From IMG/VR virus record IMGVR_UViG_3300045961_000282, positions 124,001 through 188,000 of that record: a DNA stretch of 64,000 nucleotides, one strand, 5' to 3'. The notes under the pieces are model-generated. The model saw only the letters and a program-made list of their open reading frames with translations, made no database searches and was not told where the DNA came from. This document shows, piece after piece, positions 1,576-51,703 of the stretch; within the stretch, counting starts at the first letter, position 1, and every line of letters begins with the position of its first letter. The position numbers and the translations under genes were made by a program.

Positions 1576-2700
1576 CTACTCCATCGTCGCGGCGACGGCG
1601 TCCAACTGATCCGCCGAAGCCCGCAGCGCAGCCGCCTTGGCGCGCAGGTCCGCCACCGCTGGGTGCGGCTTGGACGTCTCCGGCTGCGGCTCGGGTTCCC
1701 ATGCGACCGAGCGCAGGAACTGGTCGCGGGCGATGACGCCCCATGAGGTCGGCTTGACGTTGCTCCCGTCGGTCAGGGCATTGACGTCGAACCACGGGCC
1801 GAACAGGAACGGGATGGCCCCGGCGAAGTTGGGTGAGTCCTTGAACCTGCTGGCGAAGAACGCACAGGCGTCCTTGGTCCACTGCTCGCTGACCGTGTCC
1901 GGCGTTCCGTTGTAGTTGCCGAACTCGCTCTCTTCCATGACGTGCTTGGTCGAGGTGCCGCCGTTGTCGGCGATCCACTTCGCCCGATCCCACTTCTTGT
2001 CCTTGAACTCGTTGGCGTAGTCATGGCGGCAGAACATCAGTTGGTGTGTGCCGTTCATCCCCGGCTGCGCTGCGTCGTGGGCCTCCAGTTCCGACATCCG
2101 CCCGTCGTCATAGGAGTGGCTCCAGTGAATCGTGTTGATTGCCAGCACGCCGCGGTAGCCGATACTGCGCCAGTGGCTGACGGCGGCCTTCATCGACGGC
2201 GTCCACTGAGCCCACGTCACGTTGTTGGGCTCATTGAAGGGCTCGTAGATGACCGCCGGGTTGTCCTTGAACAAGGCGTTCACCTTGGCCATCATGTCGA
2301 AAGCCTCGGTTGCTCGGCCGGGCCATGCCGACCCTTGGCTCAGGGAATCCCACCAGCAGATCTGCGTGTACATGCCCGCCTTGGTGGCCAGATCGACCCA
2401 CTCCTTGGTGCGGTCGAGGTACTGCTGCTTGGTCAGCCCCCACTTCTGCCCGTTGTAATCGGTCGCATCGAGGCGAAGTCGCACGAGGTTGGCACCCCAC
2501 GACCTGATGGTGTCGATGACCGTCGTGCGGCCCTTCCACTGATGCTCGGCGTGCTGCGCATGCCACTGGTCGTACCCGGGCACCCCCCACACGCAGACGC
2601 CCGCGACCTGCAGGCGGGGACCCTTGGCCGATCCACGGCGCAATGAAGCGGGCGAGGATGAGGTGGCGGGGACGATGACGGGGCGTTCGAGGGCTGCCAT
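1576..2700 (-). CDS. glycoside hydrolase family 5 (cellulase-type)
   Basis: NLVRL; IYEPFNEP acid/base motif; SEFG nucleophile motif; leaderless TACCGT promoter before MAALERP; no signal peptide. Confidence 0.8.
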   Translation of the reverse strand: MAALERPVIVPATSSSPASLRRGSAKGPRLQVAGVCVWGVPGYDQWHAQHAEHQWKGRTTVIDTIRSWGANLVRLRLDATDYNGQKWGLTKQQYLDRTKEWVDLATKAGMYTQICWWDSLSQGSAWPGRATEAFDMMAKVNALFKDNPAVIYEPFNEPNNVTWAQWTPSMKAAVSHWRSIGYRGVLAINTIHWSHSYDDGRMSELEAHDAAQPGMNGTHQLMFCRHDYANEFKDKKWDRAKWIADNGGTSTKHVMEESEFGNYNGTPDTVSEQWTKDACAFFASRFKDSPNFAGAIPFLFGPWFDVNALTDGSNVKPTSWGVIARDQFLRSVAWEPEPQPETSKPHPAVADLRAKAAALRASADQLDAVAATME

Positions 2701-2728
2701 GCGTCCACGGTAGCCCACGGGTCAACCG

Positions 2729-3727
2729 TCAGGAAGCAAGAGACGCCGCAGCCTGCGGCCACCACACTCCTGCGGGCGGCTCGCCCCGGCCGCACTCGCC
2801 ATCAGAGTTTCCGGGCTGCTTGATCCACAGGTAGGCGTCGGCGCCGGGCTCATCGGTGCCAGTGGTGGGGCTCTTCCCCAGCCGCGCCGTCATGCTGTTG
2901 CACCAGTCGCCCGGTTCGACGGGGGCGCCGTTGCGGCTGACGTCGATCACGTAGCGCGTGACGCCAACCCGACGGCCCATCTCGCGTGCATATTCGGCGC
3001 TGCGGGCCGTGGAAACGTGGTTGGACACGTTCACTGCGATGCCGGTGGCCCGACGAACTCCGGAACGCCCCAGCGCCCGCGCGAGTTCTGTGCGATCCAG
3101 TTTCCATGTCGCGTTTCCTGCGTCGAGGTAGACACGGGTTTCCCCCTCGGTCAACAACGTCACCGCCTCGGACAGCAGGGCGTACCGATTCTTCGTCCCA
3201 CCTTGGACCTGACATCCGTCGACGGCCTGCGCGACCGCATCTGGCTCAATGATCACGATGGCCCGACGACCCCCGATGCCAGCCGCGATCTGCTGAACCC
3301 AGCGCAGGTACTGCGCGTCCGTCCGAGCCCCGCCCTTGGAGTACAGGCCGCAGTCGCGATCAGGGATCCCGTAGACGACGATCATCGGGACCTGCCGGGC
3401 GACGGCAGCCTCATCGACCAAGCGATCCACGGCTGCGGTGGGATCTCGGAAGGGATCGGTGAACCATACGGCCGTCGGTTGGGCGGCTATCCGGGCAGTT
3501 GCTTGCACCAGTTCCGACGGCGCATCGTCGGGCAGGTTGTTCAGTGCCCAGACCGCCGAGCCCTGCGGACTTCGGTACAGCGTTGCCCCAGCCAGCGGAT
3601 TGCTGACCGACTCGGGAGCGTTGGCCACCTCCGCCGATGGGCGGCACGCCGTCATCGCGAGGGTGGCAACAACAACGAAGGGCACCCAGAAGGGTGCCCT
3701 TCGTTGGTTTCGATCAACTCTCGACAC
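2729..3727 (-). CDS. cslZ: GH6 endoglucanase lipoprotein, CslZ-like
   Basis: AQPTAVWF, VYGIPDRDC, IEPDA, YLDAGN, VIDVSRNG, DAYLWIKQPGNSDGEC; lipobox-like LAMTAC; GTG start overlapping the glxA stop. Confidence 0.85.
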   Translation of the reverse strand: MSRVDRNQRRAPFWVPFVVVATLAMTACRPSAEVANAPESVSNPLAGATLYRSPQGSAVWALNNLPDDAPSELVQATARIAAQPTAVWFTDPFRDPTAAVDRLVDEAAVARQVPMIVVYGIPDRDCGLYSKGGARTDAQYLRWVQQIAAGIGGRRAIVIIEPDAVAQAVDGCQVQGGTKNRYALLSEAVTLLTEGETRVYLDAGNATWKLDRTELARALGRSGVRRATGIAVNVSNHVSTARSAEYAREMGRRVGVTRYVIDVSRNGAPVEPGDWCNSMTARLGKSPTTGTDEPGADAYLWIKQPGNSDGECGRGEPPAGVWWPQAAASLAS

Positions 3728-5624
3728 GGACCCACTTCGCAATCGAGGGCACTCCGTTGCTGTCGATGGCGAACAGCATGTAGTAGCCGGAGGGCACCAT
3801 CCCGAGGGAGTCGGGCACGATGCCGGTGGCGATTCCATCCTTGACGGCAAGGTCCTCCAGCGCGATCGAGCGCTGCTCGGGGTCGGTCAGGTGAGTCACC
3901 GCGCTGGGGCGGATCAACCGCATCCGATCGATGTCGCCCGTGACCTCGACGCTGATCCGCTCCCCGCGCTCCACGCTGGCCGGGGCCGCAAGGATCTCGG
4001 GCCGCGGCGTCCCCGTGAACAGGTACGGCGGGCGGTAGACCTCGATGCGGGTCTCGAACGTGCCCGGCGTGTGATTGTGCTCGTCGCCGAACAGCGGGTC
4101 AGACCCAATCGTCATCACCGAGCCGTCAGGCAGCAGCGCCGCCGTCGAGTGGTAGTTGCGCCCGATGTGGTTCGGCGCCGCCTCGATCAGCGTGTTGGTC
4201 GCCGGGTCCAGCATCATGGTCAGGCGCAGGTCGGACAGGCTCCTGCCCCGGTAGTCCCGCGAGCCGCCCGTGAGCAGAGTCTTGTCGTCAGGCAGGGTCA
4301 CGGCGCTGATGTACCGGCCCGGCTCAGGGTAGTCCGGTCCCGGCTCGTAGCGCGGCGTGTCGCTGGCATCGAGGTCGACGATGTCGATCCGGTTGGTCGA
4401 CTTGTCGCTCTCGCCCACGCCGCCGCCGCCGATAATCGCCACGCGCTGATCCTGTGCTGGGGCGAGCATGACCGACGACGACGTCTCGTTCATCTCTGGA
4501 TCGCGCAGTCCATCGACGTCCTGCCATGAGTTGTCCGACACGTCCCACAGGCCGGGCTGGCGGCCCTCATCGGCAGCGCCGTAGCCCGTGCTCGACCCGG
4601 AGTAGAACAGCCGCCCATCGGCCATGCGGAACAGTGACGGGTAGGTCGGGAAGAACCGATCCACCTTCCCGTCGTAGTGCCACGTCCCGTCACCGACGTT
4701 GAAGACCTCGTTCTGCCCCTCAAGGATGTAGCCGTGCTCGTCGAGGCCGGACACCGCGATGATGTTGTCGCCGTTGAGCGACACGAGCGTCGGATACCAG
4801 CGGGCGAAGTTCATGTCCTCGGTCTTGATGTACTTGCGCTGCTCGACGGAGTAGATGTAGGACGAATCCAGCCCGGCGTAGTTCTGCTTGTCCATCGTGA
4901 TGACGTTCGACCAGCCGTACAGGTTCTGCTGCTCGGCGTTCGAGAGGCGGGTCAGGTCGATGCGCTCAGCGTGCTCGGTCATGGCGTATTCCTTGCCCTC
5001 TTCGACCGCCTCGACCCACACGTTGGCCTGCCCCGAGGTCCACTTCCCATCCACGTCGCGGGCAGCGGGGATCACCCGATCCTCGGTGGTCACGTACTCC
5101 ATGCCGTTGGCGCGGCGCCAGACGTCGCCCTTCTTGACCTCGAACGGCTCTCCGGACTCGTTCTTGATCCACAGCGCCCCCGCAGCCTTCTTGACGTTGT
5201 CGGGCAGCACCTCGTACTTGGAGGTTCCTCCGGCCACCAGTAGGTCGCCGTTGGGCAGGTAGGCGTGGCCACCGCAGAACAGGTCCTCGGGGGTGTCGAC
5301 CTTGGTCGTGTCTCCGGTGACCGGGTTCCACAGAACGGTCTCGAACGTGCCTGCCTCGAACGCCTTGCGGCTGTTCCCCGAGCCAGCCAGCAGCAGCACT
5401 TCGCCGGAATACAGCAGGGCCGTGTGGATCGCCCGCACGCGGTACTCGTCAGGCAGTTCGATGGTCTGCCACTGGCCGTGCTCGCGGATGTAGTCCGGGC
5501 GTCCCTCGCGGTAATCCTGATAGGCGCGGGCCCCTGCGGGCCCGATGACGACGGCGTTGATCGACAGAATTCCGACCACGGCGACCGCGGTCACTATCCG
5601 ATTTCTGGTCCGGGCTGAGATCAT
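3714..5624 (-). CDS. glxA: galactose oxidase-like copper radical oxidase (AA5), GlxA-like
   Basis: DLFCGGH (Cys), RWYPTL (Tyr), RNYHS (Tyr-His) and VTH (His) ligands; N-terminal membrane anchor; ATGA overlap with cslA. Confidence 0.9.
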   Translation of the reverse strand: MISARTRNRIVTAVAVVGILSINAVVIGPAGARAYQDYREGRPDYIREHGQWQTIELPDEYRVRAIHTALLYSGEVLLLAGSGNSRKAFEAGTFETVLWNPVTGDTTKVDTPEDLFCGGHAYLPNGDLLVAGGTSKYEVLPDNVKKAAGALWIKNESGEPFEVKKGDVWRRANGMEYVTTEDRVIPAARDVDGKWTSGQANVWVEAVEEGKEYAMTEHAERIDLTRLSNAEQQNLYGWSNVITMDKQNYAGLDSSYIYSVEQRKYIKTEDMNFARWYPTLVSLNGDNIIAVSGLDEHGYILEGQNEVFNVGDGTWHYDGKVDRFFPTYPSLFRMADGRLFYSGSSTGYGAADEGRQPGLWDVSDNSWQDVDGLRDPEMNETSSSVMLAPAQDQRVAIIGGGGVGESDKSTNRIDIVDLDASDTPRYEPGPDYPEPGRYISAVTLPDDKTLLTGGSRDYRGRSLSDLRLTMMLDPATNTLIEAAPNHIGRNYHSTAALLPDGSVMTIGSDPLFGDEHNHTPGTFETRIEVYRPPYLFTGTPRPEILAAPASVERGERISVEVTGDIDRMRLIRPSAVTHLTDPEQRSIALEDLAVKDGIATGIVPDSLGMVPSGYYMLFAIDSNGVPSIAKWVRVES

Positions 5625-7342
5625 GGAGCGGCCCTTTCAAGGCTTTGGGTGCTGATGATGTCGTCGTTGGACTTGCTGAGGTTCATGACCACCGGAGCAA
5701 GGCAGACGACGATCGCCAGCATCGCCCACATGCGCATCATGAAGTGGTCGTGGCCCAACGGAACGGATGCCACAAACGCGGAGGTCAGCAGTGCCCCCCA
5801 TGCCAGATGACGCGTCCGCCAGAACGTGGACATCCTCTCACGGCCCTGCGGTGCCGGTCCCTTCGGAGTGACATTGAACGCGCCGGGCTTGCGGCTGACT
5901 GCGTGCCACAGAGCCGTGACGTACAGCGGGGCCGACAGAATGGACACGGCCATCCCCGACATGCCGGACGAACCATGCTCCTCGTGCGGGGACACGTTGT
6001 GGCGGCGGTTCCAGAAGTAGATGCCCAACTGCAGTGCAGCGGCGTTGAGGTACAGCATCAGCCACAGACCCGCGGTGACCACGACGCTGCCGATGCCGGT
6101 GAGCAGGTACATCACGAGGTTGAAGGTGCCGATGATCCACGTCAGGGCGGCAGTCGGGTAGTAGGACATCAACATCATGTAGTGCACCCGGCGCCGCCAC
6201 GGCAGGGTAGGCATCAGGGTGCGGAACTGCCGGACCACCACGTCGTCGGTGCCGCGCGACCAGCGCACCTGCTGAGTGAAGTAATCGCCCCAAAGCGATG
6301 GACCTTCGCCGACTGCAAGCACGTCGGGGGTGTAGACCGACTTCCACTTGTTCCCTGTCGCCGGGTTGACCGACGCGTGCCAGACGATGCTGGTCGCGGC
6401 GTCCTCGGTGATGGAGTCCTGCAGCCCGCCGATCTCCATGAGTGCCGAGATCCGCACGGCGTTGTTGGTTCCGACGAACATTGCGCAGTCCCACGTGTTG
6501 GCCGCGCGCTGCAGCACGGAGTGGAACAGGTACTGCTGGCTCTCCGCGGCGCGGGTCACGAAGTTGTCGTAGTTGCCGTAGACCTGCGGGCCGACCACGA
6601 ACGCGACGTCGGGGTCACGGAAGTAGCCCAGCAACCGCTCGGCGAAGTTGGGCAGCGGCACGTGGTCAGTGTCGACCGAGATCCAGTAGTCGTAGTTGTA
6701 CCCGTGGGTGAACAGCCACGAGTTGTAGTTGCCGTGCTTGGTCTTGGCCTTGTACCGACCCTCAGCGGTGTTCCACTCCTCGATGCCCTTGCGCGAGAAG
6801 TGCCGCACGCCGATCTCGGCGCACATCGCCTTGACCTCGTCGTCGTCGCCCTCGTCGAGCACCCAGACGTCCAGAACACCGGAGTGCCTGATCTGCAGGG
6901 CGGCCTCGAGGGTCCGCCGCAGCATGTGCAGCGGTTCCTTGCCGGGCACGATTGTGGTGATAAAAGCCACTCGGCTGTCGGTTTCCGGCAGGACCGGAAT
7001 CGGGTCACGGGCGTGCACGGTGGCCATCGCCAACGTGCCGACGTTGATCAAGCGGAACGTCTCGATGGCTCCGATGAACACGATCATCGTGACGCTGACG
7101 GCGAGTTGCCAGCCACTCTGCCCCTGCGGGTAGTGACTGGGCCACATGAGCCAGATCAGGAACACCGACTGGAACAGCAGCGCTGCGCTGACCAGAAGGA
7201 TGGACCACAGGCGAGCCCTGCCGTGATTGAGTCGACGGTACTCAACAGTGTGCTCAGGACCTGCCTCAACGGGCTCACCGGCCAACTCGCTGTACCGGTC
7301 GTAGTCGTAGTGATACGTCTGCACGGTCCCCTCTTCCTGCAT
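5621..7342 (-). CDS. cslA: cellulose synthase-like processive GT2, CslA-like
   Basis: LDEG, KHGNYN, VDTDH, FVVGPQVYGN, ITED, QQVRW; multiple TM helices; N-terminal YDYDRYSELAG resembles Streptomyces CslA; start approximate. Confidence 0.9.
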   Translation of the reverse strand: MQEEGTVQTYHYDYDRYSELAGEPVEAGPEHTVEYRRLNHGRARLWSILLVSAALLFQSVFLIWLMWPSHYPQGQSGWQLAVSVTMIVFIGAIETFRLINVGTLAMATVHARDPIPVLPETDSRVAFITTIVPGKEPLHMLRRTLEAALQIRHSGVLDVWVLDEGDDDEVKAMCAEIGVRHFSRKGIEEWNTAEGRYKAKTKHGNYNSWLFTHGYNYDYWISVDTDHVPLPNFAERLLGYFRDPDVAFVVGPQVYGNYDNFVTRAAESQQYLFHSVLQRAANTWDCAMFVGTNNAVRISALMEIGGLQDSITEDAATSIVWHASVNPATGNKWKSVYTPDVLAVGEGPSLWGDYFTQQVRWSRGTDDVVVRQFRTLMPTLPWRRRVHYMMLMSYYPTAALTWIIGTFNLVMYLLTGIGSVVVTAGLWLMLYLNAAALQLGIYFWNRRHNVSPHEEHGSSGMSGMAVSILSAPLYVTALWHAVSRKPGAFNVTPKGPAPQGRERMSTFWRTRHLAWGALLTSAFVASVPLGHDHFMMRMWAMLAIVVCLAPVVMNLSKSNDDIISTQSLERAAP

Positions 7343-7445
7343 GACGTGAGTATGGACGGTTGCGCCAGCAGGCCTTCCCTGTCTGACGAGTTGCCAAACC
7401 CTACCACGATTTGGATCCCTGCTAGTCCGTGCTAGGGTTTGCCCC

Positions 7446-7658
7446 GTGAGTGACATGGACCGCGACGCAGCGGTGGCCGGGGCCCTGTTCCTTGGATTCG
7501 TCGGAACCATCAGCCTGACAGTGGGGATCGCCATACTGTTCGGAGCCGGGTGGGCGTTCGTCGCCTTCGGGGGGATCACCTTGGTCAATGCATGGCTCAT
7601 GGGGGTGCGGAAGAGCCGCAGCAACGAAACCCTGCTTTTCGCCAACACCAACAACTAG
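7446..7658 (+). CDS. small two-TM membrane protein (leaderless)
   Basis: TAGGGT -10 element 7 nt before the GTG; hydrophobic. Confidence 0.6.
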   Translation: MSDMDRDAAVAGALFLGFVGTISLTVGIAILFGAGWAFVAFGGITLVNAWLMGVRKSRSNETLLFANTNN

Positions 7659-9402: not shown

Positions 9403-9536
9403 GTGATCGCCTGCACGTTTATGGTCACACTGAGGATTGCGCGTGTCTTGCGTGCTCCTTCCTGAATGCCATAGCCGCCGCGCCCGGGGAGCGGACGTCG
9501 GACAAGATCAAATACGTTTTAGGAGACAGTGAATGA
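9399..9536 (+). CDS. 45-aa Cys/His mini-ORF
   Basis: GTGA and ATGA overlaps bridge it to the dehydrogenase; HTEDCACLAC. Confidence 0.4.
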   Translation: MSDRLHVYGHTEDCACLACSFLNAIAAAPGERTSDKIKYVLGDSE

Positions 9537-10777
9537 GCAAGGTGCTGATAGTTGGGATGGGCTACGTCGGCCTGCCTATCGCCGTACGTGCCGCCGAGGT
9601 TGGCCACGAGGTCATCGGCGTGGACGTGAGTCAGGACAAGATCGACTCGATCGCCACTGGGATGTCCTACATCGAGGACGTCAGCGACGAGCGGCTGCAG
9701 GCCGTGGTTGCATCAGGGGCCCTGCGGGCCACCGACCTCAGTGAGCGACACTCCTTCGAGATCGCGCTGATCACCGTGCCGACGCCGGTCGACGCGATGA
9801 AGCGGCCCGACCTGCAGTTCATCGAGGCGGGGGCGAACTACGTCGCCTCCTGCATGAACGGCGGCGAGGTTGTAGTGCTGGAGTCCACCACGTACCCCGG
9901 CACCACCGAGGATGTCGTCGCCGAGCGCATTCGCCGGATCGCTGGGCTGGAGCCGGAGCGCGACTACATGCTCGGGTACTCGCCTGAGCGCATCAATCCC
10001 GGCGACTCGGTGAACACCTTCGACACGGTTCCCAAGATCGTGTCCGGCACCGATGCGGCCTCGCTGGCGAGGATCCAGTCGTTCTACGACACGCTGGTCC
10101 AGCGGACCGTCCCCGTGTCCTCGCCGCGCGCGGCCGAACTGGCCAAGGTGTTCGAGAACACGTTCGCTCAGGTCAACATCGCGCTGGTCAACGAACTGGC
10201 ATTGGTCTGCTCCGAGTTGGGCCTCGACGTCGATGAGGTTCTCGACGCCGCCGCCACCAAGGGGCACTCGATCATGCGGTTCCGTCCCGGCCCCGGTGTC
10301 GGTGGGCACTGCATCAGCGTCGACCCGCTGTACCTGACGTGGATGCGGCGCAACATGGCGGGCAAGGCGTTCCGGTTCGCCGAACTGGCCGATGAGATCA
10401 ACGGCGGCATGCCCGAGCACGTGGTTCACCGGGCCCGCTCGGTGCTCAACGACCACGGGGTTCCGATCTGGAACTCGCGCATCGGCGTGCTGGGGGTTGC
10501 CTACAAGCCCAACGTCGCCGACATCCGGGAGTCTCCGGCTCTGGTTCTGGTTGAGCGACTGCGCGAGACCGGCGCGGAAGTCTCCGTGTTCGATCCGCAC
10601 GTCAACACCGCTGAGGATGCTGAACTGGCGGCAAAGTCCGCGGGGTCGTTCGACCTGATGATCGTGGCCACCGATCACGACGACTTCGACTACGAGGCCA
10701 TCCACAAGGGTGCCCGTGTCATCCTCGACACACGCAACCGCTACCCTCGGGGCACGGCGCGGGTCCACAAGTTGTGA
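9533..10777 (+). CDS. nucleotide-sugar (UDP-HexNAc/UDP-Glc) 6-dehydrogenase, WecC/WbpA/TviB-type
   Basis: GMGYVG Rossmann motif, ESTTYPGTT, KVFENTF..VNIALVNE, GGHCI catalytic Cys. Confidence 0.92.
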   Translation: MSKVLIVGMGYVGLPIAVRAAEVGHEVIGVDVSQDKIDSIATGMSYIEDVSDERLQAVVASGALRATDLSERHSFEIALITVPTPVDAMKRPDLQFIEAGANYVASCMNGGEVVVLESTTYPGTTEDVVAERIRRIAGLEPERDYMLGYSPERINPGDSVNTFDTVPKIVSGTDAASLARIQSFYDTLVQRTVPVSSPRAAELAKVFENTFAQVNIALVNELALVCSELGLDVDEVLDAAATKGHSIMRFRPGPGVGGHCISVDPLYLTWMRRNMAGKAFRFAELADEINGGMPEHVVHRARSVLNDHGVPIWNSRIGVLGVAYKPNVADIRESPALVLVERLRETGAEVSVFDPHVNTAEDAELAAKSAGSFDLMIVATDHDDFDYEAIHKGARVILDTRNRYPRGTARVHKL

Positions 10778-10820
10778 CCGCTTCCAAGGGGGGGTGTCTG
10801 CTGTGACCCAAGAATTCCTC

Positions 10821-10931
10821 ATGTCCTACGGACAGATCACCATCATCGGCCTCGGGTCGTTGATAGGGCTGAGCGCGGTCCTGATCCATCGCGTGCGCAC
10901 TCGCCATCACAAGTACGGGAAGGGATCATGA
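10821..10931 (+). CDS. 36-aa single-TM peptide
   Basis: Hydrophobic segment followed by a basic tail; ATGA overlap with the GT2. Confidence 0.45.
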   Translation: MSYGQITIIGLGSLIGLSAVLIHRVRTRHHKYGKGS

Positions 10932-12265
10932 CTCCGATAGGTCGCAACACCCCGGCTCGCGGTCTGGGCATGGTGGCCAGCCTGATCTTCATCGGGCTGT
11001 TCATCGGCTACTTCTCATGGTCGGCCATGGGCTGGATCAACCAGAGCGGCGCATGGTTGCTGGTCGGTTTCTTTGCCTTCTTCGCCACCATCACGCTGGG
11101 GAACATGATCTCCGGGCTGTTCTGGAAGTCGTTCACCGACCTCCCGGTCCCCGACGCCCGCGTGGTGGCCATCGTGCCGATCTATGCGGAAAAGACCGAG
11201 CGGGTCCACAAGGTGGTGCTCTCGCTGATCCATCAGACTCGCCCGCCGGACCACATCTACGTGGTCGACGACGGCTCCGAGCCACCGCTGGTGGGCTTCG
11301 AGCACCCGCTGGTGACGTGGATCCGACAGGAGAACGCAGGCAAGCGCCACGCGCAGGCACGCGCACTGGCCGAGTTCGACCGCGATGAGTACGACCTGAT
11401 CCTCACTGTCGACTCGGATTCGGTGTTCGACGCCGATGCGGTTGAGCACCTGATGCGCCCGTTCAACCACTCGGACATCCATGCCTCGACGGCGATGATC
11501 TACACGTCGAACTGGCGGGCCAACCTGATGACCCGGTTCACCGACATCAACCTGCAGATCTCGTGCTTGCAGATGCGGATGCTCCGCTCGTGGATGGGTA
11601 TTGTTACGCCGACCTCGGGGGCCATCGCCATCTACCGGCCGTGGGTGTTCTTCGACAACCTCGACGACTACCTGACCTCAGGCAACATCGGCGACGACCG
11701 ACGGCTGTCGTTCTACGCGCTCATGAAGGGCCGTGTCGTCACGGTCAACGAGGCGGCCTGCGAGACGCACCTGCCCGAGACGCCGCGCGGCATTTTCAAG
11801 CAGCGCACCCGTTGGGCCAAGTCGGCATGGCTGGGAACTCCCTTCGTGTGGACCAACCTCAAGCCGCTGGTGGTGTTCTTCTACACCTACCCGCTGCTGT
11901 TCGCCCTGCTGTGGCCGCTGTCGGTGGCGTTCCTGTCGTGGATCTGGATCGCCTACGGCATCCCGTCGCTGATGTACGGCGTCGCCTTCTGGTTCGTCAC
12001 GTCGTTCACGATGACCGGGGCTGCCTATGCCCAGCGGCCCTCGATGCCGTTCGGGCAGAAGGTGCTGCAGGTCGGGCTGTCCCTGCTCTACCCGATCTGG
12101 GGTCTGATCCTGCTGCGTCCCGCGGCGTACAAGGCGCTGGCCACCGTCCGCGATCAGAGTTGGGGGACCCGTGGAGCCGATGCTCCTGAGCCTGAGATGG
12201 ACGGCGTGGCCCCGGCCCCATCTGGTGGGCGCGTGATCGGCCTGCCCAAGAGGACTGCCGCCTGA
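10928..12265 (+). CDS. processive GT2 of the hyaluronan synthase/NodC type
   Basis: DDGS, GKRHA, VDSDS, GDDRRL and QRTRW motifs; N- and C-terminal TM helices. Confidence 0.85.
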   Translation: MTPIGRNTPARGLGMVASLIFIGLFIGYFSWSAMGWINQSGAWLLVGFFAFFATITLGNMISGLFWKSFTDLPVPDARVVAIVPIYAEKTERVHKVVLSLIHQTRPPDHIYVVDDGSEPPLVGFEHPLVTWIRQENAGKRHAQARALAEFDRDEYDLILTVDSDSVFDADAVEHLMRPFNHSDIHASTAMIYTSNWRANLMTRFTDINLQISCLQMRMLRSWMGIVTPTSGAIAIYRPWVFFDNLDDYLTSGNIGDDRRLSFYALMKGRVVTVNEAACETHLPETPRGIFKQRTRWAKSAWLGTPFVWTNLKPLVVFFYTYPLLFALLWPLSVAFLSWIWIAYGIPSLMYGVAFWFVTSFTMTGAAYAQRPSMPFGQKVLQVGLSLLYPIWGLILLRPAAYKALATVRDQSWGTRGADAPEPEMDGVAPAPSGGRVIGLPKRTAA

Positions 12266-14382: not shown

Positions 14383-14392
14383 GATATGGGGC

Positions 14393-14428
14393 GGCCCCCC
14401 CTCGCATATCCGACGAGGAGGGGCCTTT
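14393..14428 (+). terminator. intrinsic terminator between convergent units
   Basis: ggccccccctcg..cgaggaggggcc followed by ttt. Confidence 0.6.
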
Positions 14429-14479
14429 GGTTATCCCATTAGCAGTGGGTTCCTGCTTCATCGTCCCGACGGCACTTGA

Positions 14480-14615
14480 AGTGACGGATCATTTTCAAGG
14501 TCGCGGCGCCCTGCCATTAGGCCACCGAGACATGGGGTGTTGCTGCGGTCGCACAGGGCAACCAGAGTCTCGGACAGGAATTGAACCTGCATCTCCGCGA
14601 GGAGAGTCCGTCACT
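14480..14615 (-). ncRNA. circularly permuted tRNA-like RNA #2 (YrlA/Y-RNA-like)
   Basis: Order is T-arm (GCAGG TTCAATT CCTGT), acceptor CCGAGAC/GTCTCGG closed by a loop, then D-arm; TCGCGG/CCGCGA stem; 9-bp terminal stem AGTGACGGA/TCCGTCACT. Confidence 0.75.
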
Positions 14616-14634
14616 ATTCGATTCGGGTCGTACA

Positions 14635-14797
14635 GGTGGTGCTAAGACTGGAGCGAGAGCCTGAATCTGATGGGGGTCGCTGCCTCTACCGATTGGGCTA
14701 CGGACCCATGTGGTGGGCCCCGCAGGATTCGAACCTGCACTGTCACGACGTGTCCCTGAGTCTGAGCCTCAGCCTGAGTCTGTGCTCCATACCCACC
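14635..14797 (-). ncRNA. circularly permuted tRNA-like RNA #1 (YrlA/Y-RNA-like)
   Basis: T-arm GCAGG TTCGAAT CCTGC; GGGGCCC-A-CCA-CAT-GGGTCCG acceptor hairpin; Leu-like D-arm TAGCCCAATCGGTAGAGGC; GTCGT/GCGAC stem; outer TGGAGC/GCTCCA pairing; ends approximate. Confidence 0.75.
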
Positions 14798-14842
14798 CCC
14801 CACGGCCCGTGCAATACGGCGCAGGGGGAGTCTGTGTAGTTG

Positions 14843-15139
14843 TTACTCGCCGCACCAACCGTTCGGCGCGTCCCATGAGGGTACCGGCTGCAGCGCCGCC
14901 GCGGAGGCATCGCGCGACGTGCTGATGAAGCCCGCCCCTTCGATGCACAGGGCGACCATGGTCGGGTGCAGGTTCACGTTGGCGACCATCCGCACCTTGT
15001 CCGGGTCGGTGATAGGGACGCCCTTGAGGTCGCGGGCCTCCTGCGCGCTGCCGATCGGGCCGCCATCAGCGCAGGCGGCCACAGTCAGGCCGACCAGAGC
15101 GATGAGGGCTCCCGCGGCGACCGTGCGTGCGCGGTTCAT
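14843..15139 (-). CDS. small lipoprotein
   Basis: Signal peptide with lipobox VAAC; ATGA overlap. Confidence 0.7.
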   Translation of the reverse strand: MNRARTVAAGALIALVGLTVAACADGGPIGSAQEARDLKGVPITDPDKVRMVANVNLHPTMVALCIEGAGFISTSRDASAAALQPVPSWDAPNGWCGE

Positions 15140-15873
15140 CAGGCGCCCAGCAGGTAGTCGAAGATCTTCTTGCCGACGTGCACGTCGGTGATCTCCATCG
15201 AGTTGGCCTGCTCGCGGGCGAACTTGACCGCGTCCATCAGGGTGTCGACGCGAACGAGCAGTTCGGCGACCCGATCGGCCGGAACGGCACCGGAGAACTT
15301 GGTGGTCGACCAGTAGCCGACGACCTGATCCTCGTAATACATCTCGACCTGCGCCGGGTGCTTGTCGGTGGCCGGGGCCTTGACGTGGTTCTGCGGCACC
15401 TTCTTGGTCCGGGTGGTCTCGGTGACCTCGGTCGCCCACGCGCCCGCGGCGGCGTCGTGGTGCCACTTCTCTGAGGGATCCAGCGTCGGCAACTTCGAGA
15501 TGAAGGTGCGGATGTCGGTGATCTGCTTCTCGAGGAACAGCAGGCCGGTCACCGGGACATCGGCCAGCACGACGGTGCCGTCGACGACCACGTCGGCGCG
15601 GGCCTGCTGATTGGCGGCCTCCTTGGTCATGGTGACGTCGAAGAGCCGGGTCAGGTCGCGGCCGAGGTTGGCGAGGATCGTCTCGGCGTTCAACTGCACC
15701 AGCGTGGACTCCGAGGGCAGCCGGTCGCCCTCGTCGTCCTTGGGCCGGTAGGTGCGCGAGATGCCCGCGAACCGGGCTTCCTTCTGCAGCGCGTGGTAGG
15801 CGTCGGAGACTGCGCGGTGCGCGTGGGCCCGCACGCCCTTCTCGACAGCGAGGATCTGGTTCAACTTGGTCAC
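15139..15873 (-). CDS. conserved hypothetical protein (KLNQI.AVEKG / KHPAQVE family, common in actinobacteria)
   Basis: Recognisable family motifs GISRTYRPKDDEG, LLFLEKQ, TKKVP.NHVKA.AT.KHPAQV; own promoter and RBS. Confidence 0.8.
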   Translation of the reverse strand: MTKLNQILAVEKGVRAHAHRAVSDAYHALQKEARFAGISRTYRPKDDEGDRLPSESTLVQLNAETILANLGRDLTRLFDVTMTKEAANQQARADVVVDGTVVLADVPVTGLLFLEKQITDIRTFISKLPTLDPSEKWHHDAAAGAWATEVTETTRTKKVPQNHVKAPATDKHPAQVEMYYEDQVVGYWSTTKFSGAVPADRVAELLVRVDTLMDAVKFAREQANSMEITDVHVGKKIFDYLLGA

Positions 15874-15917: not shown

Positions 15918-16520
15918 TCAGGGGGTGGCAATCACCGAGGTGTCCGTGGTGATCACCGAGGTGTCCACCGAGGCCGTCTCGCCCAGCACATAGGACGACA
16001 CCGAGCGGGTCAGCCCGGCATAGGTGCTCGACGTCTCCGTGGCGGAGTAGGACACCGGGGCGAACCCGACCGACGCGCCGGTCCGAACCGCCGAGAGGTC
16101 TGAGGCGAGGAACACGAACTCCCACCCGTCGGCCTTCGCGGCGTCGATCAGGTCGGACACGGACTCCTTGGTGTACTCCCGTGAGGCGTTCTCGCCGCCG
16201 TCGGTGACGATGACCATCACGACCTTCTCGGCCGGGTTCTTGGCCACGTGCTTGCGGGTGGAGGACACCGCCTTGCCGATCGCGTCCAGCAGCGCCGTGG
16301 CGCCGCGCGGCGTCAAGGTGTAGCCCGGCCACGCCGAGGCAACCACGGGCTTCACGGCTTCGGTGATCTTGTCGTCGAAGTCCCACAGGGCGATCGACAC
16401 GTCGTCGTTGCCCGCGAACTCCGCGACGAACGACTCGATGCCGCCCTGCGCGTCCTCGCGGGTCATCTGCATCGACCCAGAGCGATCGATCACCAAGCAC
16501 ACGTGCGCGGATGCTGTCAT
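15918..16520 (-). CDS. stand-alone von Willebrand factor A domain protein
   Basis: MIDAS DRSGS, TALLDAIG, TDGGENAS. Confidence 0.85.
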   Translation of the reverse strand: MTASAHVCLVIDRSGSMQMTREDAQGGIESFVAEFAGNDDVSIALWDFDDKITEAVKPVVASAWPGYTLTPRGATALLDAIGKAVSSTRKHVAKNPAEKVVMVIVTDGGENASREYTKESVSDLIDAAKADGWEFVFLASDLSAVRTGASVGFAPVSYSATETSSTYAGLTRSVSSYVLGETASVDTSVITTDTSVIATP

Positions 16521-16864
16521 TGCGTCTCCTCGAATATCTCCACTGGGATTCCCGCCTCGCGGGCCAGATCGATGGTCATGTTGGTCCCCCGGGAACCGGG
16601 GCGCGGGAAGGCCAGCACCACATCGGGGCGCAGGGCGACCATCTCTGCGTTGCGCAGGTAGCCCGCCCGCTTTCCGAACTGGTTCCAGTCTGCCGGATGA
16701 GGGTCCTCGGGGACCCCGGTCATCTCACACCACTCGTGGGCGTACTGGTCGGCGCCGGTCGGGCACCGGCCGTTGATCACCAGCGTCGGGCTCTTGGCAG
16801 CCAGCGCGTCGTGCACGGTCTGGATGTCCGTCCAGTCCCGTGAACCAGTCACCATCACCCGCAT
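16517..16864 (-). CDS. SLOG-family (DUF2493/YspA-like) protein
   Basis: VTGSRDW, TGAD, ADW..GKRAG.LRN.EM, SRGT. Confidence 0.85.
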   Translation of the reverse strand: MRVMVTGSRDWTDIQTVHDALAAKSPTLVINGRCPTGADQYAHEWCEMTGVPEDPHPADWNQFGKRAGYLRNAEMVALRPDVVLAFPRPGSRGTNMTIDLAREAGIPVEIFEETQ

Positions 16865-16920
16865 TTGCAATCCTTTTGAAATCACTACCCCCACTCACCC
16901 CACATGCTACGGGCCGTGTC

Positions 16921-25587: not shown

Positions 25588-27432
25588 TTACCGCCTGCCC
25601 TTGTACGGAGAACGTTTTCCGAGGTTCGCTGCCCCTAGTGGCGGCAACCGATAGGCAGACATTGAGCGGGCACGCAGATTAGAATTGACGGCAAATGAAG
25701 CGCCCTTGACCTTGGTGGTGAGGGCCAGCGACGCCCAGACCATCGCGTCGAGACGTCCCGGAGATACCTTGGATTCCGCGGGGACCCATGAGGTGATCTC
25801 GGATTCCAACAGCGGGTGGTAGTTCAGCATATGCAGGCGGCCCTGCTCAGCAAGGGCCGCCACCGGCTCGGCGCGGGTTGCCTTGCCTGCTCGGGCGTGC
25901 ACGATGTAGACCGGCACGTTGGCATTCACCTGTCCGATGGCCATGCGGACCAGTTCGCCGCCCTGATTCCCCTCGGCCACCACTGGGCCGCCCCACTTGA
26001 TCGCCATGTCCACGACCCGCTTGGCCCAGACCGCCGGGCTGCCCAGCACGGTCGCATCCTCCACGACGTAGAGTTGGCGGCGGTAGAAGTCCCGCTCGGC
26101 GGTTCCCTTCACCACCACGATGCCCGCCTCGTCCTTGGGGCGCTCAGCAACACTGGGATCGACCCCGATCACCGTGTGCATCTTGATCCCGCCCGGCAGT
26201 TCGGTCACCCGTGCCGCATCGAGGTCGGACTGCATGAACAGCGCGCCCTCGATGTCGTGCAGCATCTCGCCCATCAGTTCCTGCTGGCCGATCCGGGTCC
26301 CTTCGTACAGGCCGAGGATCGTGGCGCGGAAGGACTGCGCAAGGTTGGCGAGGTTGTCATATGTCGTTCCACGGGTGATGACGATGCCGAACTCAGGATT
26401 CTCGGATTCCTCCAGCAGTTGGAACATCGAGGGAACGCGTCGCGGCGTGGTCGTGGCAACCATACGCGGCATGTCGCCATCAACCGGAAGTCGTAGACCC
26501 AGCCGCAAGTTGGCGAACGCCGTCAGACCATCGGCGCCGGAGACCTGCGGGTAGGAAGCAAACTCGTCGCAGTTGTGAATCAAGACTCCGGCGGCATAGA
26601 ACTCCGGCGCTCCGTTGATCGTGAGGTCATAGACATTGGCTCGACCCGCCGGGCGCACGGAAGCAACAGGAAACAGGGTGGTGCTCGAGTCTGTGCTGAG
26701 GCGGACGTGAACCATATCCCCGGCCTCGAGGTCGGCGGCCTGAACCCACGTGTCCCGCCTCGATTCGCTCGCCACCAACACGAGGTGATCGGGGGTGCAG
26801 CGCAATGTCGTCGGCCCGGCCTCGATCTCCACCACCTCGCGGTCGGTTCCCGTGCGCTGTGCGCGCGCGACCGGCCAGAAGCCGGAACGGGTGAGCACTT
26901 TCATCCCCGGCTGGATCTGTTCGATGGGCAGCGGCCCCAGCGAGGTGAGTACCGGCTCCCCTTCGGCTACGCACCACGCGGTGTCGAACTGGGGACCACG
27001 CAACTGGTCCGGCTCGTCGGCGGAGAAGGCCAATGCATACGCGCCGTTCGGCCACGACACCCGGCGCTTGGATGGCTCCCAGACGGGTACCTCGCCGGGT
27101 CGGGAGGACTCGATGATCCCCGACGGGCCGTTGACCATGACATCGCGGACGTCAGCAGCGGTGCGGCCCAGCAGCGCGATTCGCCTGCCGTGGCCATCGC
27201 GGACCCGTTCATTGATCCACTCAGCGGCGGTTCTCGTTTTCCCCCAACCCCGCCCTGCCATCGCCAGCCAAAGCACCCAGTCTCCGGACGGAGGGGTCTG
27301 GGAGGGCCTCCTCCAGAAGGCCCAATCGTGTATCAGCGACTCGGCATCAACCCCTTCAAGGGTCGCCTCGCGCTCCTCAGGGGGAAGCAGGGCGATGCGT
27401 TGGGCCATCGAGAGTTCGTGGCCGTAGGTCAT
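25588..27432 (-). CDS. terL: terminase large subunit (intein-containing)
   Basis: Walker A AGRGWGKT; LRGPQF..W-[intein]-CDEFA Walker B; TTTP; nuclease GVDPS, DEAGIVV and DAMVWA; leaderless TATGGT promoter. Confidence 0.92.
   Translation of the reverse strand: MTYGHELSMAQRIALLPPEEREATLEGVDAESLIHDWAFWRRPSQTPPSGDWVLWLAMAGRGWGKTRTAAEWINERVRDGHGRRIALLGRTAADVRDVMVNGPSGIIESSRPGEVPVWEPSKRRVSWPNGAYALAFSADEPDQLRGPQFDTAWCVAEGEPVLTSLGPLPIEQIQPGMKVLTRSGFWPVARAQRTGTDREVVEIEAGPTTLRCTPDHLVLVASESRRDTWVQAADLEAGDMVHVRLSTDSSTTLFPVASVRPAGRANVYDLTINGAPEFYAAGVLIHNCDEFASYPQVSGADGLTAFANLRLGLRLPVDGDMPRMVATTTPRRVPSMFQLLEESENPEFGIVITRGTTYDNLANLAQSFRATILGLYEGTRIGQQELMGEMLHDIEGALFMQSDLDAARVTELPGGIKMHTVIGVDPSVAERPKDEAGIVVVKGTAERDFYRRQLYVVEDATVLGSPAVWAKRVVDMAIKWGGPVVAEGNQGGELVRMAIGQVNANVPVYIVHARAGKATRAEPVAALAEQGRLHMLNYHPLLESEITSWVPAESKVSPGRLDAMVWASLALTTKVKGASFAVNSNLRARSMSAYRLPPLGAANLGKRSPYKGRR
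26572..26973 (-). mobile_element. 134-aa mini-intein (no homing endonuclease)
   Basis: Starts CVAEG; block B CTPDH; ends VYDLT...IHN followed by Cys+1. Confidence 0.92.
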
Positions 27433-27504
27433 GGGGCGAACCATATCCCGCCGTCTCGGGTGTCAACCGCGGTTCATGCTCGATTCACGCGCGATGAATC
27501 CCGC

Positions 27505-51605: not shown

Positions 51606-51703
51606 GAGCACGACGCAGCGGATTTGCAAGATTTCGCTGCGTCGTGCTAGTGTTATTCCATAACCACCTAGCAACACCACCACCACCTGAAAGGATCACC
51701 ACC

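What the first reader, a model, noticed from the sequence alone, without database searches (positions are those of the whole stretch)
14480..14797. Two tandem circularly permuted, anticodon-less tRNA mimics
Seen: on the minus strand each element reads stem, T-arm (TTCRA), acceptor 3' strand, loop, acceptor 5' strand, D-arm, stem. The acceptor strands pair only in the permuted order (GGGGCCC with the downstream GGGTCCG; CCGAGAC with the downstream GTCTCGG), so this is not an ordinary tRNA tandem. The anticodon loop is replaced by a long closing stem. Element 1 keeps A73-CCA inside a 7-nt loop and has a tRNA-Leu(UAA)-like D-arm. Known: bacterial YrlA Y RNAs have this T-acceptor-D topology and usually sit beside a Ro60/TROVE gene, but no TROVE gene is visible here. 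Inference: these are Ro-independent Y-like RNAs, or decoys for tRNA-targeting defence nucleases. Element 1 might be cut into a two-piece RNA chargeable by LeuRS, which does not read the anticodon.
Basis: partly seen in the sequence, partly recalled or inferred. Interest (0 to 1): 0.88.

Follow-up and report, generated by a model that had tools for sequence, protein, structure and literature searches.

The report
Tandem tRNA-mimic RNA beside DUF7873
The two elements are real: they belong to one ~440-base non-coding RNA with two tRNA-shaped modules of the bacterial Y-RNA (YrlA) type, and this RNA follows an uncharacterised protein gene (DUF7873) in many phages and in at least 590 bacterial species, which points to an undescribed RNA-protein particle.

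Summary
On the minus strand, window 14815-14444 holds two modules in the order T-arm, 7-bp acceptor hairpin, D-arm, each closed by a stem in place of the anticodon arm.

Covariance models built here find both modules directly downstream of Pfam DUF7873 genes:
- in about 65-73 distinct viral loci
- in 79 of 80 bacterial chromosomal loci sampled, out of at least 590 species that carry the gene

Covariation is strong. E2 is 92.5% paired against 41-45% in slid controls, and all 35 pairs show compensatory changes. The Levitt 15:48 pair switches between A:U and G:C.

Rfam's YrlA is the only family that matches, and it scores far below its gathering score (29 and 17 bits against 69). The flanking helices, conserved internal loops and 6-nt YUSAR repeats are specific to this family.

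The window has no TROVE/Ro60 gene, but 7 related viral loci carry one next to DUF7873. "Ro-independent" is therefore plausible but unproven.

Encoded NCCA, U-1 and G+1 are common in phage copies and rare in bacterial ones. This fits RNase P cleavage, as shown for M. smegmatis YrlA. The decoy and LeuRS-charging ideas are not supported.

Best reading: a new Y-RNA-like RNP whose partner is DUF7873.

The parts
15139..15873 (-).
   Evidence: Pfam PF25283, E 8.6e-110. AlphaFold2 pLDDT 93.6. No PDB or BFVD fold match with E<1e-3. No PHROG, NCBIfam or PADLOC family. Homologues in 75 phage records, 89 IMG/VR loci and at least 590 bacterial species.
14795..14830 (-). 5' leader hairpin of the RNA (C-run pairing with G-run, with an inner hairpin)
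   Evidence: Read directly. Relatives have one or two hairpins at this place, in several with loop UUGAGCR. Not tested for covariation.
14629..14815 (-). E1 unit as a whole: outer helix, hexamer repeats, closing stem and tRNA-like module 1
   Evidence: Covariance model R2: 143.9 bits, E 3e-32, full length. On 89 aligned matches, 92% of cells are paired against 40-52% in slid controls.
14756..14779 (-). Four tandem hexamers ACUCAG GCUGAG GCUCAG ACUCAG (YUSAR motif, period 6)
   Evidence: The motif occurs 2.44 times per 5' flank against 0.43 in shuffles. A spacing of exactly 6 is seen 107 times against 0.3 expected, over 107 distinct units.
14784..14788 (-). GGAGC, 5' strand of the outer helix of the E1 unit; pairs with GCUCC at 14650-14654
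   Evidence: Helix 1 of A8: 81% paired, all 4 pairs with compensatory changes.
14745..14749 (-). GUCGU, 5' strand of the stem that replaces the anticodon arm of module 1; pairs with GCGAC at 14676-14680
   Evidence: Helix 2 of A8: 72.8% paired, 24-29 sequences per pair changed on both sides. Sequence checked.
14681..14740 (-). tRNA-like module 1: T-arm 14722-14738, acceptor 14715-14721 with 14701-14707, loop A-CCA-CAU 14708-14714, D-arm 14682-14698
   Evidence: RNAalifold on 28 sequences: T and acceptor stems have up to 13 compensatory sequences per pair, and the D-arm is invariant. R1 core match 14681-14740, 37.2 bits. Rfam YrlA partial match, 16.6 bits.
14641..14671 (-). 3' strand of the E1 unit with the conserved motif YCAGAUUCAGGCUCUCGCUCCAGUCUUAGC (includes GCUCC 14650-14654)
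   Evidence: Conserved block in A4. Two YUSAR motifs 19 nt apart in 68 of 107 units.
14444..14636 (-). E2 unit as a whole: P1 14623-14627/14465-14469; internal loop AUCGAAUA / UUCAAGUGCCG; P2 14607-14614/14481-14488; P3 14595-14599/14502-14506; tRNA-like module 2
   Evidence: Covariance model R1: 115.6 bits, E 3.6e-26, full length. On 66 sequences, 92.5% paired against 41-45% slid, 35 of 35 pairs with compensatory changes, covariation score 0.906 against 0.12-0.15. Rfam YrlA full-length match 14478-14614, 29 bits.
14508..14590 (-). tRNA-like module 2: T-arm 14574-14590, acceptor 14567-14573 with 14525-14531, 35-nt insert loop 14532-14566, D-arm 14508-14522
   Evidence: Acceptor helix 99.8% paired and T-arm 99.4% paired across 66 sequences. 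Levitt pair A15:U48 in 28 and G15:C48 in 18 of 47 phage copies.
14393..14464 (-). 3' tail with the conserved AAUGGGAUAAC (14430-14440) and a final G+C-rich hairpin 14393-14425 with loop UCGGAUAUG; probable 3' end or terminator
   Evidence: Read directly. AAUGGGYGGCA and a hairpin loop CGGNUAYG recur in phage and Streptomyces copies. Not tested statistically. The simple terminator scan does not call it, because it has no U-run.

Best explanation
The region encodes one structured non-coding RNA of about 440 nt (window about 14830 to 14393, minus strand).

It is built from two units. Each unit carries a tRNA-like three-way junction: T-arm, 7-bp acceptor hairpin and D-arm, held in an L-shape by the usual tertiary pairs. 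A stem closes each junction where a tRNA has its anticodon arm. The modules are homologous in kind to the tRNA-like domain of bacterial Y RNAs (YrlA).

The RNA is the cognate partner of the protein encoded just upstream, DUF7873. The two most likely form a ribonucleoprotein.

Shown here:
- the fold, by covariation
- the family-specific conserved non-tRNA parts: 6-nt YUSAR repeats, the internal loops AUCRAC/CUUAAACGY, and the tail
- the near-invariable gene-RNA synteny across phages and several bacterial phyla

Inferred:
- DUF7873 binds the family-specific parts.
- The tRNA-like modules are handled by tRNA enzymes. In phage copies such as this one, RNase P would cut 5' of G+1 of module 1, leaving an ...ACCA end and a nicked two-piece RNA, as shown for M. 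smegmatis YrlA.
- The modules serve as handles that bring an RNA-processing or RNA-decay activity to the particle, by analogy with Ro60-Y RNA-PNPase.

My probabilities: a real RNA gene with this fold, above 0.95; a functional DUF7873-RNA pair, about 0.6-0.7; a Y-RNA-like tethering or quality-control role, about 0.3.
For: Fold:
- Searches give compensatory changes in all helices, well above slid and shuffled controls.
- One search shows the Levitt 15:48 covariation (A:U 28, G:C 18, one mismatch in E2).

Kinship with YrlA:
- RF02553 is the only Rfam match, and it is full length.

Synteny:
- The E2 unit is full length downstream of DUF7873 in 64 distinct viral or phage loci and in 79 of 80 bacterial loci.
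- The E1 unit is full length in about 73 of 100 loci.
- Both modules are also present in Klebsiella, Ralstonia, Pseudanabaena, Rhizobium and Vibrio phages.
- In a Streptomyces chromosome the locus stands alone among housekeeping genes.

Specificity:
- In Ro-linked loci the models match almost only the tRNA-like core. The only full-length alignments there are two low-scoring ones, L192 at 48.7 bits and L185 at 27.9 bits.
- L084 has core modules upstream of its Ro60 gene as well as the DUF7873-type RNA downstream of DUF7873.

Processing:
- NCCA follows the acceptor 3' strand in 21 of 39 E1 and 21 of 47 E2 phage copies. U-1 is present in 22 of 39 and 35 of 47, and G+1 in 35 of 39 and 41 of 47.

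Repeats.
Against: - There are no expression data, so the transcript ends are inferred.
- The protein-RNA contact rests on synteny alone.
- DUF7873 has no detectable similarity to any RNA-binding fold and is not basic (pI 6.1).
- NCCA is rare in bacterial copies (6 of 59 and 9 of 78), so cleavage and a CCA end cannot be the family's general mechanism.
- TROVE genes lie next to DUF7873 in 7 viral loci, so Ro60 may be the real RNA binder at least there.
- It is unresolved whether the hexamer repeats are paired or single-stranded. Native against non-native duplex energies differ only moderately.
Confidence: 0.6

Rival explanations
1. It is an ordinary Ro60-dependent Y RNA. The RNA binds a Ro60/TROVE protein encoded elsewhere in the phage genome or by the host, and DUF7873 is an accessory or unrelated neighbour.
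For: - The tRNA-like modules are of the YrlA type.
- TROVE genes lie within 3 kb of DUF7873 on the same strand in 7 of about 70 distinct viral loci, whereas only about 0.7% of phage records have any TROVE gene.
- Tandem modules are also common upstream of Ro genes.
- Only 64 kb of a 206-kb contig could be searched.
Against: - No TROVE in the window, in the 80 bacterial loci, or within 8 kb in a Streptomyces chromosome.
- No Arthrobacter, Rhizobium, Klebsiella or Serratia phage appears among the ten genera named for the Ro hits, and the unnamed remainder is at most two single records, although 28 records from those genera carry DUF7873.
- The GNCGAAN0-1G motif proposed for Ro binding is absent.
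- L084 has its own core modules next to Ro in addition to the DUF7873-type RNA.
- Ro loci lack DUF7873.
Confidence: 0.2
2. It is a phage decoy or sponge. The anticodon-less tRNA mimics titrate host defence enzymes that attack tRNAs (nucleases, or nucleotidyl- and acetyl-transferase toxins acting on the acceptor end).
For: - In phages the locus sits inside tRNA/tmRNA gene arrays.
- Phage copies keep NCCA far more often than bacterial ones.
Against: - The same gene-RNA pair is a stand-alone chromosomal locus in at least 590 bacterial species from several phyla, so the ancestral role is cellular.
- There is no anticodon loop for anticodon nucleases.
- DUF7873 does not match any PADLOC defence model.
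- The family-specific flanks are as conserved as the tRNA-like parts, which a simple decoy would not need.
Confidence: 0.08
3. Module 1 is a circularly permuted, chargeable tRNA-like RNA. After RNase P cleavage it is aminoacylated (by LeuRS) and donates or sequesters an amino acid.
For: - 7-bp acceptor stem, A73-CCA, U-1, G+1 and the A15:U48 Levitt pair.
- A D-loop AAUYGGUAGA like that of tRNA-Leu. The neighbouring Phendrix tRNA-Leu has the same D-arm.
- From established knowledge: E. coli LeuRS does not read the anticodon.
Against: - A73 is not conserved. The top discriminator tetramers give A in at least 20 of 39 phage E1 copies and U or G in at least 15 of the rest.
- NCCA is missing in half of the phage copies and in about 90% of the bacterial ones.
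- Some loci lack the tRNA-like cap of unit 1 altogether (L011).
- There is no long variable arm.
- Chen et al. did not detect cleavage of the Salmonella or Deinococcus Y RNAs at the analogous site and judged aminoacylation unlikely to be a general feature of Y RNAs.
Confidence: 0.05
4. It is not a functional RNA of its own. It would be decayed tRNA gene remnants, or a cis-acting 3' UTR or terminator region of the upstream gene.
For: - It always lies downstream on the same strand as DUF7873.
- No sigma-70-like promoter was found between gene and RNA in the window.
- The single-sequence folding energy is not better than that of shuffles.
Against: - Compensatory changes in every helix over about 150 loci, with conserved unpaired motifs.
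- In the window and in L006 an extra small gene separates DUF7873 from the RNA, yet the RNA is intact.
- Pseudogenes would not keep the Levitt-pair covariation.
Confidence: 0.03

Closest known systems
YrlA / YrlB Y RNAs of Mycobacterium smegmatis and mycobacteriophages (Rfam RF02553; Chen et al. 2014, PMC4201824)
   Same: - A tRNA-like domain in the order T-arm, acceptor hairpin, D-arm, closed by a stem.
- Levitt-pair covariation.
- A 7-bp acceptor stem, as in the M. smegmatis RNA that RNase P cuts and that receives CCA.
- Two RNAs or modules in tandem from one locus.
- Presence in actinophages among tRNA genes.
   Different: - It scores 29 and 17 bits against a gathering score of 69.
- The flanking helices and conserved loops differ, and in Ro-linked loci my models match almost only the tRNA-like core.
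- No GNCGAAN0-1G motif.
- The linked gene is DUF7873, not Ro60/TROVE.
- Both modules belong to one larger conserved RNA with 6-nt repeats.
Ro60 (Rsr)-Y RNA-PNPase particle (RYPER) of Deinococcus and Salmonella
   Same: A dedicated protein gene next to a structured RNA with a tRNA-like handle. TROVE genes are neighbours of DUF7873 in about 10% of the viral loci.
   Different: DUF7873 (244 aa, mixed alpha/beta, no fold match) is unrelated to the HEAT-repeat ring plus vWA of Ro60. No binding or effector data exist.
Two-piece (circularly permuted) tmRNA
   Same: The gene order is T-arm, acceptor 3' strand, CCA, intervening segment, acceptor 5' strand. Maturation would give two base-paired pieces.
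   Different: - No G3:U70 alanine identity (only 1 of 39 and 1 of 47 copies have a G.U pair at position 3:70).
- A full D-stem is present.
- No tag reading frame or pseudoknots.
- ARAGORN calls no tmRNA.
Permuted tRNA genes of Cyanidioschyzon merolae and other algae
   Same: The 3' half of the cloverleaf is encoded upstream of the 5' half, with the acceptor ends joined by a short loop.
   Different: Those genes keep a complete anticodon arm and mature into normal tRNAs. Here the anticodon arm is replaced by long helices that continue into a larger RNA.
Large phage-associated ncRNAs near tRNA genes (GOLLD, ROOL)
   Same: Large conserved structured RNAs of unknown function, found in phages and bacteria and often beside tRNA arrays (my own knowledge of the Rfam literature).
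   Different: No sequence or structure match. Those RNAs have no dedicated adjacent protein gene and no tandem YrlA-type modules.

Membership tests
YrlA / bacterial Y RNA (RF02553) | tRNA-like domain with T-arm, acceptor-like hairpin and D-arm in that order, closed by a stem | tested here: met
YrlA / bacterial Y RNA (RF02553) | Tertiary Levitt pair 15:48 kept by compensatory change (G:C or A:U), as reported by Chen et al. 2014 | tested here: met
   E2: A:U 28, G:C 18, one mismatch of 47. E1: A:U 37 of 39. Bacterial copies: A:U 77 of 78 and 55 of 59.
YrlA / bacterial Y RNA (RF02553) | Score at or above Rfam's gathering threshold (69 bits) | tested here: not met
   29.0 bits (element 2) and 16.6 bits (element 1). 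Relatives score 21-37 bits. A Ro-linked phage YrlA scores 52 bits.
YrlA / bacterial Y RNA (RF02553) | Encoded within about 4 kb of a Ro60/TROVE gene, on the same strand | tested here: not met
   No TROVE in the 64-kb window. Met in 7 related viral loci. Not met in 80 bacterial loci or in L179 (+-8 kb).
YrlA / bacterial Y RNA (RF02553) | GNCGAAN0-1G motif near the 5' end (proposed Ro60 contact) | tested here: not met
   No match to the motif anywhere in 14385-14835 on the minus strand. Only CGAAU occurs, within CCCGAAUCGAAU.
YrlA / bacterial Y RNA (RF02553) | Bound by Ro60/Rsr in vivo | not testable with these tools
   Needs immunoprecipitation.
tRNA (RF00005) | Contiguous cloverleaf with anticodon arm | tested here: not met
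   ARAGORN and Rfam call only tRNA-Trp and tRNA-Cys elsewhere in the window. No anticodon stem-loop is present.
Two-piece (permuted) tmRNA | Alanine identity pair G3:U70, tag reading frame and pseudoknots | tested here: not met
   The 3:70 pair is C:G or G:C in 35 of 39 and 38 of 47 copies, and G.U only once in each set. ARAGORN finds no tmRNA. The Rfam beta_tmRNA and tmRNA models give no match at the locus.
Permuted tRNA gene (algal type) | Complete anticodon arm, so that processing yields a standard tRNA | tested here: not met
   The closing stems continue into long helices and conserved loops.
Pfam DUF7873 (PF25283), the upstream protein | Full-length match above the gathering score | tested here: met
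   366.6 bits against a cut-off of 27; residues 1-242 match profile positions 1-242 of 244.

The most novel reading that the evidence does not exclude
DUF7873 and its downstream about 400-nt RNA form a previously unrecognised, widespread ribonucleoprotein, present in at least 590 bacterial species of several phyla and in phages from actinophages to Klebsiella and Ralstonia jumbo phages. It would be a second, Ro60-independent class of Y-RNA-like particle. A protein of novel fold, possibly as an oligomer, would read the 6-nt YUSAR repeats and conserved internal loops. The two tRNA mimics would recruit tRNA-processing or RNA-decay enzymes. Phages would have tuned the mimics (encoded CCA) for cleavage into two-piece RNAs.
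Probability: 0.4. Interest if true: 0.85.

Novelty: new variant of a known kind. Interest (0 to 1): 0.72.

Why it matters
Bacterial Y RNAs have so far been defined by their link to Ro60. This finding has four consequences.

- It shows a large, strongly conserved relative of these RNAs tied to a different, uncharacterised protein family. That gives DUF7873 its first functional lead.
- It adds a major family to the small list of bacterial tRNA mimics.
- It offers tractable systems for testing what tRNA-like handles do in RNA surveillance: Streptomyces, and SEA-PHAGES phages of Gordonia and Arthrobacter.
- Phage copies encode CCA and bacterial copies do not. This contrast gives a ready-made comparison for asking whether nicking by RNase P matters.

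It also explains the unannotated 400-1100-nt gaps in many deposited phage genomes.

Tried and rejected
- Single-sequence folding gave z-scores of +0.6 and -0.8, which is uninformative in this G+C-rich DNA.
- Megablast of the locus against phage records found nothing.
- For DUF7873, phmmer against PDB sequences and Foldseek against PDB and BFVD gave no hit better than E 5e-3. The weak PUR-alpha and ring-protein matches were not used. PHROGs, NCBIfam and PADLOC gave nothing useful.
- I considered that the window's VWA gene (15918-16520) might be a remnant of the Ro60 vWA domain. I rejected this because BLASTP against eight TROVE proteins gave E above 0.5, and it recurs in only one other locus.
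- RNAalifold on the MAFFT alignment of the E1 unit found only the core. Column voting on base-pair probabilities recovered only the innermost stem. Fixed-register counts of that stem were blurred by register shifts. A covariance model was needed.
- Whether the hexamer regions pair with each other stays unresolved. The native duplex is -26.7 against -22.8 kcal/mol for non-native partners, and the native partner has a median rank of about 8 of 39.
- A scan of IMG/VR for Ro60 found only 17 loci with the two peptide patterns used, so it is a weak test of co-occurrence.
- Literature searches for DUF7873, for YrlA after 2015, for Y RNA with phage, for permuted tRNA with phage, and for Streptomyces tRNA-like sRNAs found no description of this RNA. 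The Sim et al. 2020 review could not be read.
Full report
**What is in the window.** On the minus strand, downstream of a 244-aa gene (15873-15139), lies a short lipoprotein-like ORF (15139-14843). After it comes about 440 nt with no credible ORF. I read this stretch directly and checked all coordinates by script.

- Module 1: T-arm 14738-14722; acceptor 3' strand GGGGCCC; loop A-CCA-CAU (14714-14708); acceptor 5' strand GGGUCCG; UA; D-arm GCCC AAUCGGUA GAGGC. It is closed by GUCGU/GCGAC.
- Module 2: T-arm 14590-14574; acceptor CCGAGAC/GUCUCGG with a 35-nt insert loop; D-arm 14522-14508. It is closed by three successive helices.

ARAGORN and the Rfam tRNA model do not call either module. With permissive thresholds the only Rfam family that matches is YrlA (RF02553). 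It matches element 2 full length (29 bits, E 5e-4 for the 900 bases searched) and element 1 in part (16.6 bits). Both are far below the gathering score of 69.

**The upstream gene and its relatives.**
- The upstream gene is Pfam DUF7873 (E 8.6e-110).
- The window is part of IMG/VR contig 3300045961_000282, 206 kb long.
- DUF7873 homologues occur in 75 deposited phage genomes, from hosts Arthrobacter, Gordonia, Rhodococcus, Rhizobium, Vibrio, Klebsiella, Serratia, Ralstonia and cyanobacteria.
- They also occur in 9 + 80 IMG/VR loci, some of them the same contigs fetched twice.
- I had not expected them in at least 590 bacterial species genomes.
- In the annotated phages the gene is followed by an unannotated gap of 400-1100 nt, often inside a tRNA/tmRNA array.

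**The RNA recurs with the gene.** A simple scanner for the permuted arrangement found the two modules downstream of DUF7873 in nearly all loci. I then built two covariance models.

R1 models the E2 unit (165 positions, 35 pairs).
- It finds a full-length match just downstream of DUF7873 in 64 distinct viral or phage loci and in 79 of 80 bacterial loci.
- It scores the window at 115.6 bits (14444-14636).

R2 models the E1 unit (188 positions).
- It finds full-length matches in about 73 of 100 loci searched.
- It scores the window at 143.9 bits (14629-14815).

With filters off, the distant Klebsiella, Ralstonia, Pseudanabaena, Rhizobium and Vibrio phage loci also show the modules after the gene.

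In Streptomyces sp. NBC_00057 the gene and a 435-nt non-coding gap sit alone among housekeeping genes. No prophage genes and no TROVE gene lie within 8 kb.

**The fold is supported by covariation.**
- On a plain MAFFT alignment of 24 E2 units, my six-helix structure is 87% paired against 41-45% when partners are slid. 33 of 35 pairs show double changes.
- On 66 model-aligned sequences it is 92.5% paired against 41-45%. All 35 pairs have compensatory changes, and the covariation score is 0.906 against 0.12-0.15. An alignment fitted to the model leans towards the model.
- For the E1 unit the T-arm and acceptor covary strongly. The D-arm UAGCCCAAnnGGYAGAGGC is essentially invariant.
- The stem replacing the anticodon arm is 73% paired, with 24-29 double changes per pair. 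An outer helix GGAGC/GCUCC is 81% paired.
- The tertiary Levitt pair switches between A15:U48 (28) and G15:C48 (18), with one exception among 47 phage E2 copies. Chen et al. used the same signature to argue for an L-shaped fold in YrlA (PMC4201824).

**Features specific to this family.**
- 5' of module 1 there are tandem hexamers of the form YUSAR (window: ACUCAG GCUGAG GCUCAG ACUCAG). They occur 2.44 times per flank against 0.43 in shuffles. A spacing of exactly 6 is seen 107 times against 0.3 expected.
- The 3' strand carries UCUCGCUCCAG and two more motifs 19 nt apart.
- Unit 2 has an internal loop AUCRAC opposite CUUAAACGY between P1 and P2.
- By eye I also see a further helix between the linker (GCCRYC) and the tail (GGYGGC), a tail motif AAUGGGYGGCA, and a final hairpin whose loop CGGNUAYG is conserved from phages to Streptomyces. 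I did not test these three features statistically.
- Some loci (L011, L009) keep the hexamer stem but lack the tRNA-like cap of unit 1. The scaffold, not module 1, is therefore the constant part of unit 1.
- Whether the hexamer strands pair with each other is unresolved.

**Relation to Ro60.**
- The window has no TROVE gene. 30 large ORFs were scanned with Pfam, and tblastn with eight TROVE proteins found nothing.
- The VWA gene just upstream (15918-16520) is not Ro-like.
- Ro60 homologues occur in 356-369 phage records, almost all from Mycobacterium, Streptomyces, Gordonia and Microbacterium phages. No Arthrobacter, Rhizobium, Klebsiella or Serratia phage is among the genera listed, and at most two single records are not named.
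- However, 7 distinct viral DUF7873 loci do have a TROVE gene within 3 kb on the same strand. L084 has a canonical Ro60. L011, L071, L065, L070, L080 and L072 have divergent ones. This is far more than the about 0.7% of phage genomes that have any TROVE gene.
- Ro loci themselves lack DUF7873.
- In Ro loci my models match almost only the tRNA-like core, often twice in tandem upstream of Ro. The exceptions are two low-scoring full-length alignments, L192 at 48.7 bits and L185 at 27.9 bits.
- L084 has core modules upstream of its Ro gene and also the DUF7873-type RNA after DUF7873.
- Gordonia phages Forza (Ro plus YrlA) and Phendrix (DUF7873 plus this RNA) have near-identical tRNA/tmRNA arrays.

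I read this as two related but separable modules, Ro60 with YrlA and DUF7873 with this RNA, that sometimes travel together.

**Processing signals.**
- In phage copies NCCA directly follows the acceptor 3' strand in 21 of 39 (E1) and 21 of 47 (E2). By my own estimate, chance would give a few per cent.
- The base before the 5' strand is U in 22 of 39 and 35 of 47. The first base is G in 35 of 39 and 41 of 47.
- In bacterial copies NCCA is rare (6 of 59, 9 of 78). E2 is mostly closed by GCUCGA or GCUUCGA.
- M. smegmatis YrlA also has a 7-bp acceptor stem. It is cut by RNase P in vivo and in vitro and receives CCA, and YrlA and YrlB come from one precursor (PMC4201824).
- Nicking of module 1 in this phage RNA is therefore a reasonable inference. 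It cannot be the general mechanism of the family.
- Charging by LeuRS remains speculation. The D-loop is tRNA-Leu-like and the window copy has A73. But by the top discriminator tetramers, A73 is present in at least 20 of the 39 phage E1 copies and is U or G in at least 15 of the rest, so it is not conserved.

**The protein.**
- AlphaFold2 with a 60-sequence alignment gives a confident model (pLDDT 93.6, pTM 0.70). It has long helices and a long beta-hairpin that carries the conserved KKVPRNH and HPAQVEMYYED segments.
- Foldseek finds nothing with E<1e-3 in PDB or BFVD.
- No family library names a function.
- No paper in the searchable library mentions DUF7873 or this RNA.

**Verdict.**
- The RNA is best described as a new, large and widespread variant of the YrlA/Y-RNA kind. 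Its defining partner is DUF7873 rather than Ro60.
- It fails three of the tested membership criteria for YrlA proper: the score, Ro adjacency and the GNCGAA motif.
- Function is inferred only by analogy.
- The decoy idea is weakened by the chromosomal distribution.

Noticed in passing
window 14843-15139 (-): A 98-aa ORF with a signal peptide and lipobox (LTVAAC) lies between DUF7873 and the RNA, and its start overlaps the DUF7873 stop. Most relatives lack it. L006 has a different small secreted-protein ORF at the same place.
   Followed up: partly
window 1576-7654 and 9533-12265: GH5 cellulase, GH6, a galactose-oxidase/GlxA-like protein and a large GT2 lie side by side. This resembles the Streptomyces cslA-glxA-cslZ glycan cluster. 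A UDP-glucose dehydrogenase and another GT2 follow. This is unusual cargo for a contig that IMG/VR calls viral, so part of the contig may be host DNA.
   Followed up: no
window 25588-27444 (-): The large terminase subunit (Terminase_6N and 6C) has an intein-splicing-domain hit between the two domains.
   Followed up: no
window 51644-54226 (+): A complete MmeI-type (type IIL) restriction-modification enzyme: the N-terminal, helicase-spacer and methyltransferase domains are all present.
   Followed up: no
window 15918-16520 (-) and 16517-16894 (-): A stand-alone 200-aa VWA-domain gene and a 125-aa protein matching phrog_289 lie directly upstream of DUF7873. The VWA protein is not similar to the Ro60 vWA domain, and it recurs next to DUF7873 in only one other locus (L046).
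   Followed up: partly
L140:4560-5481: A Ktedonobacterales MAG carries two complete copies of the two-unit RNA in tandem after one DUF7873 gene.
   Followed up: no
L011:2780-6003: The order is: divergent TROVE+vWA gene; a lone permuted tRNA-like module with an ACCAU loop (4738-4794, not called by ARAGORN); DUF7873; a hexamer stem without a tRNA-like cap; then a normal E2 unit. It is a natural variant that separates the scaffold from module 1.
   Followed up: partly
L094 (Gordonia phage Forza) compared with L002 (Gordonia phage Phendrix): The two phages have almost the same tRNA/tmRNA array. Forza has Ro60 plus a YrlA (Rfam 52 bits). Phendrix has DUF7873 plus the two-module RNA at the other end of the array.
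   Followed up: partly
L072:5131-5561: Three further matches to the permuted core lie downstream of the RNA, near a divergent TROVE gene. ARAGORN calls only one of the underlying sequences, as tRNA-Pro.
   Followed up: no
window 14393-14425 (-); L001, L002, L005, L007, L008, L009, L170: The final G+C-rich hairpin has a conserved loop, CGGNUAYG (CGGAUAUG in the window), in phage and Streptomyces copies. An ordinary terminator would not need this.
   Followed up: no
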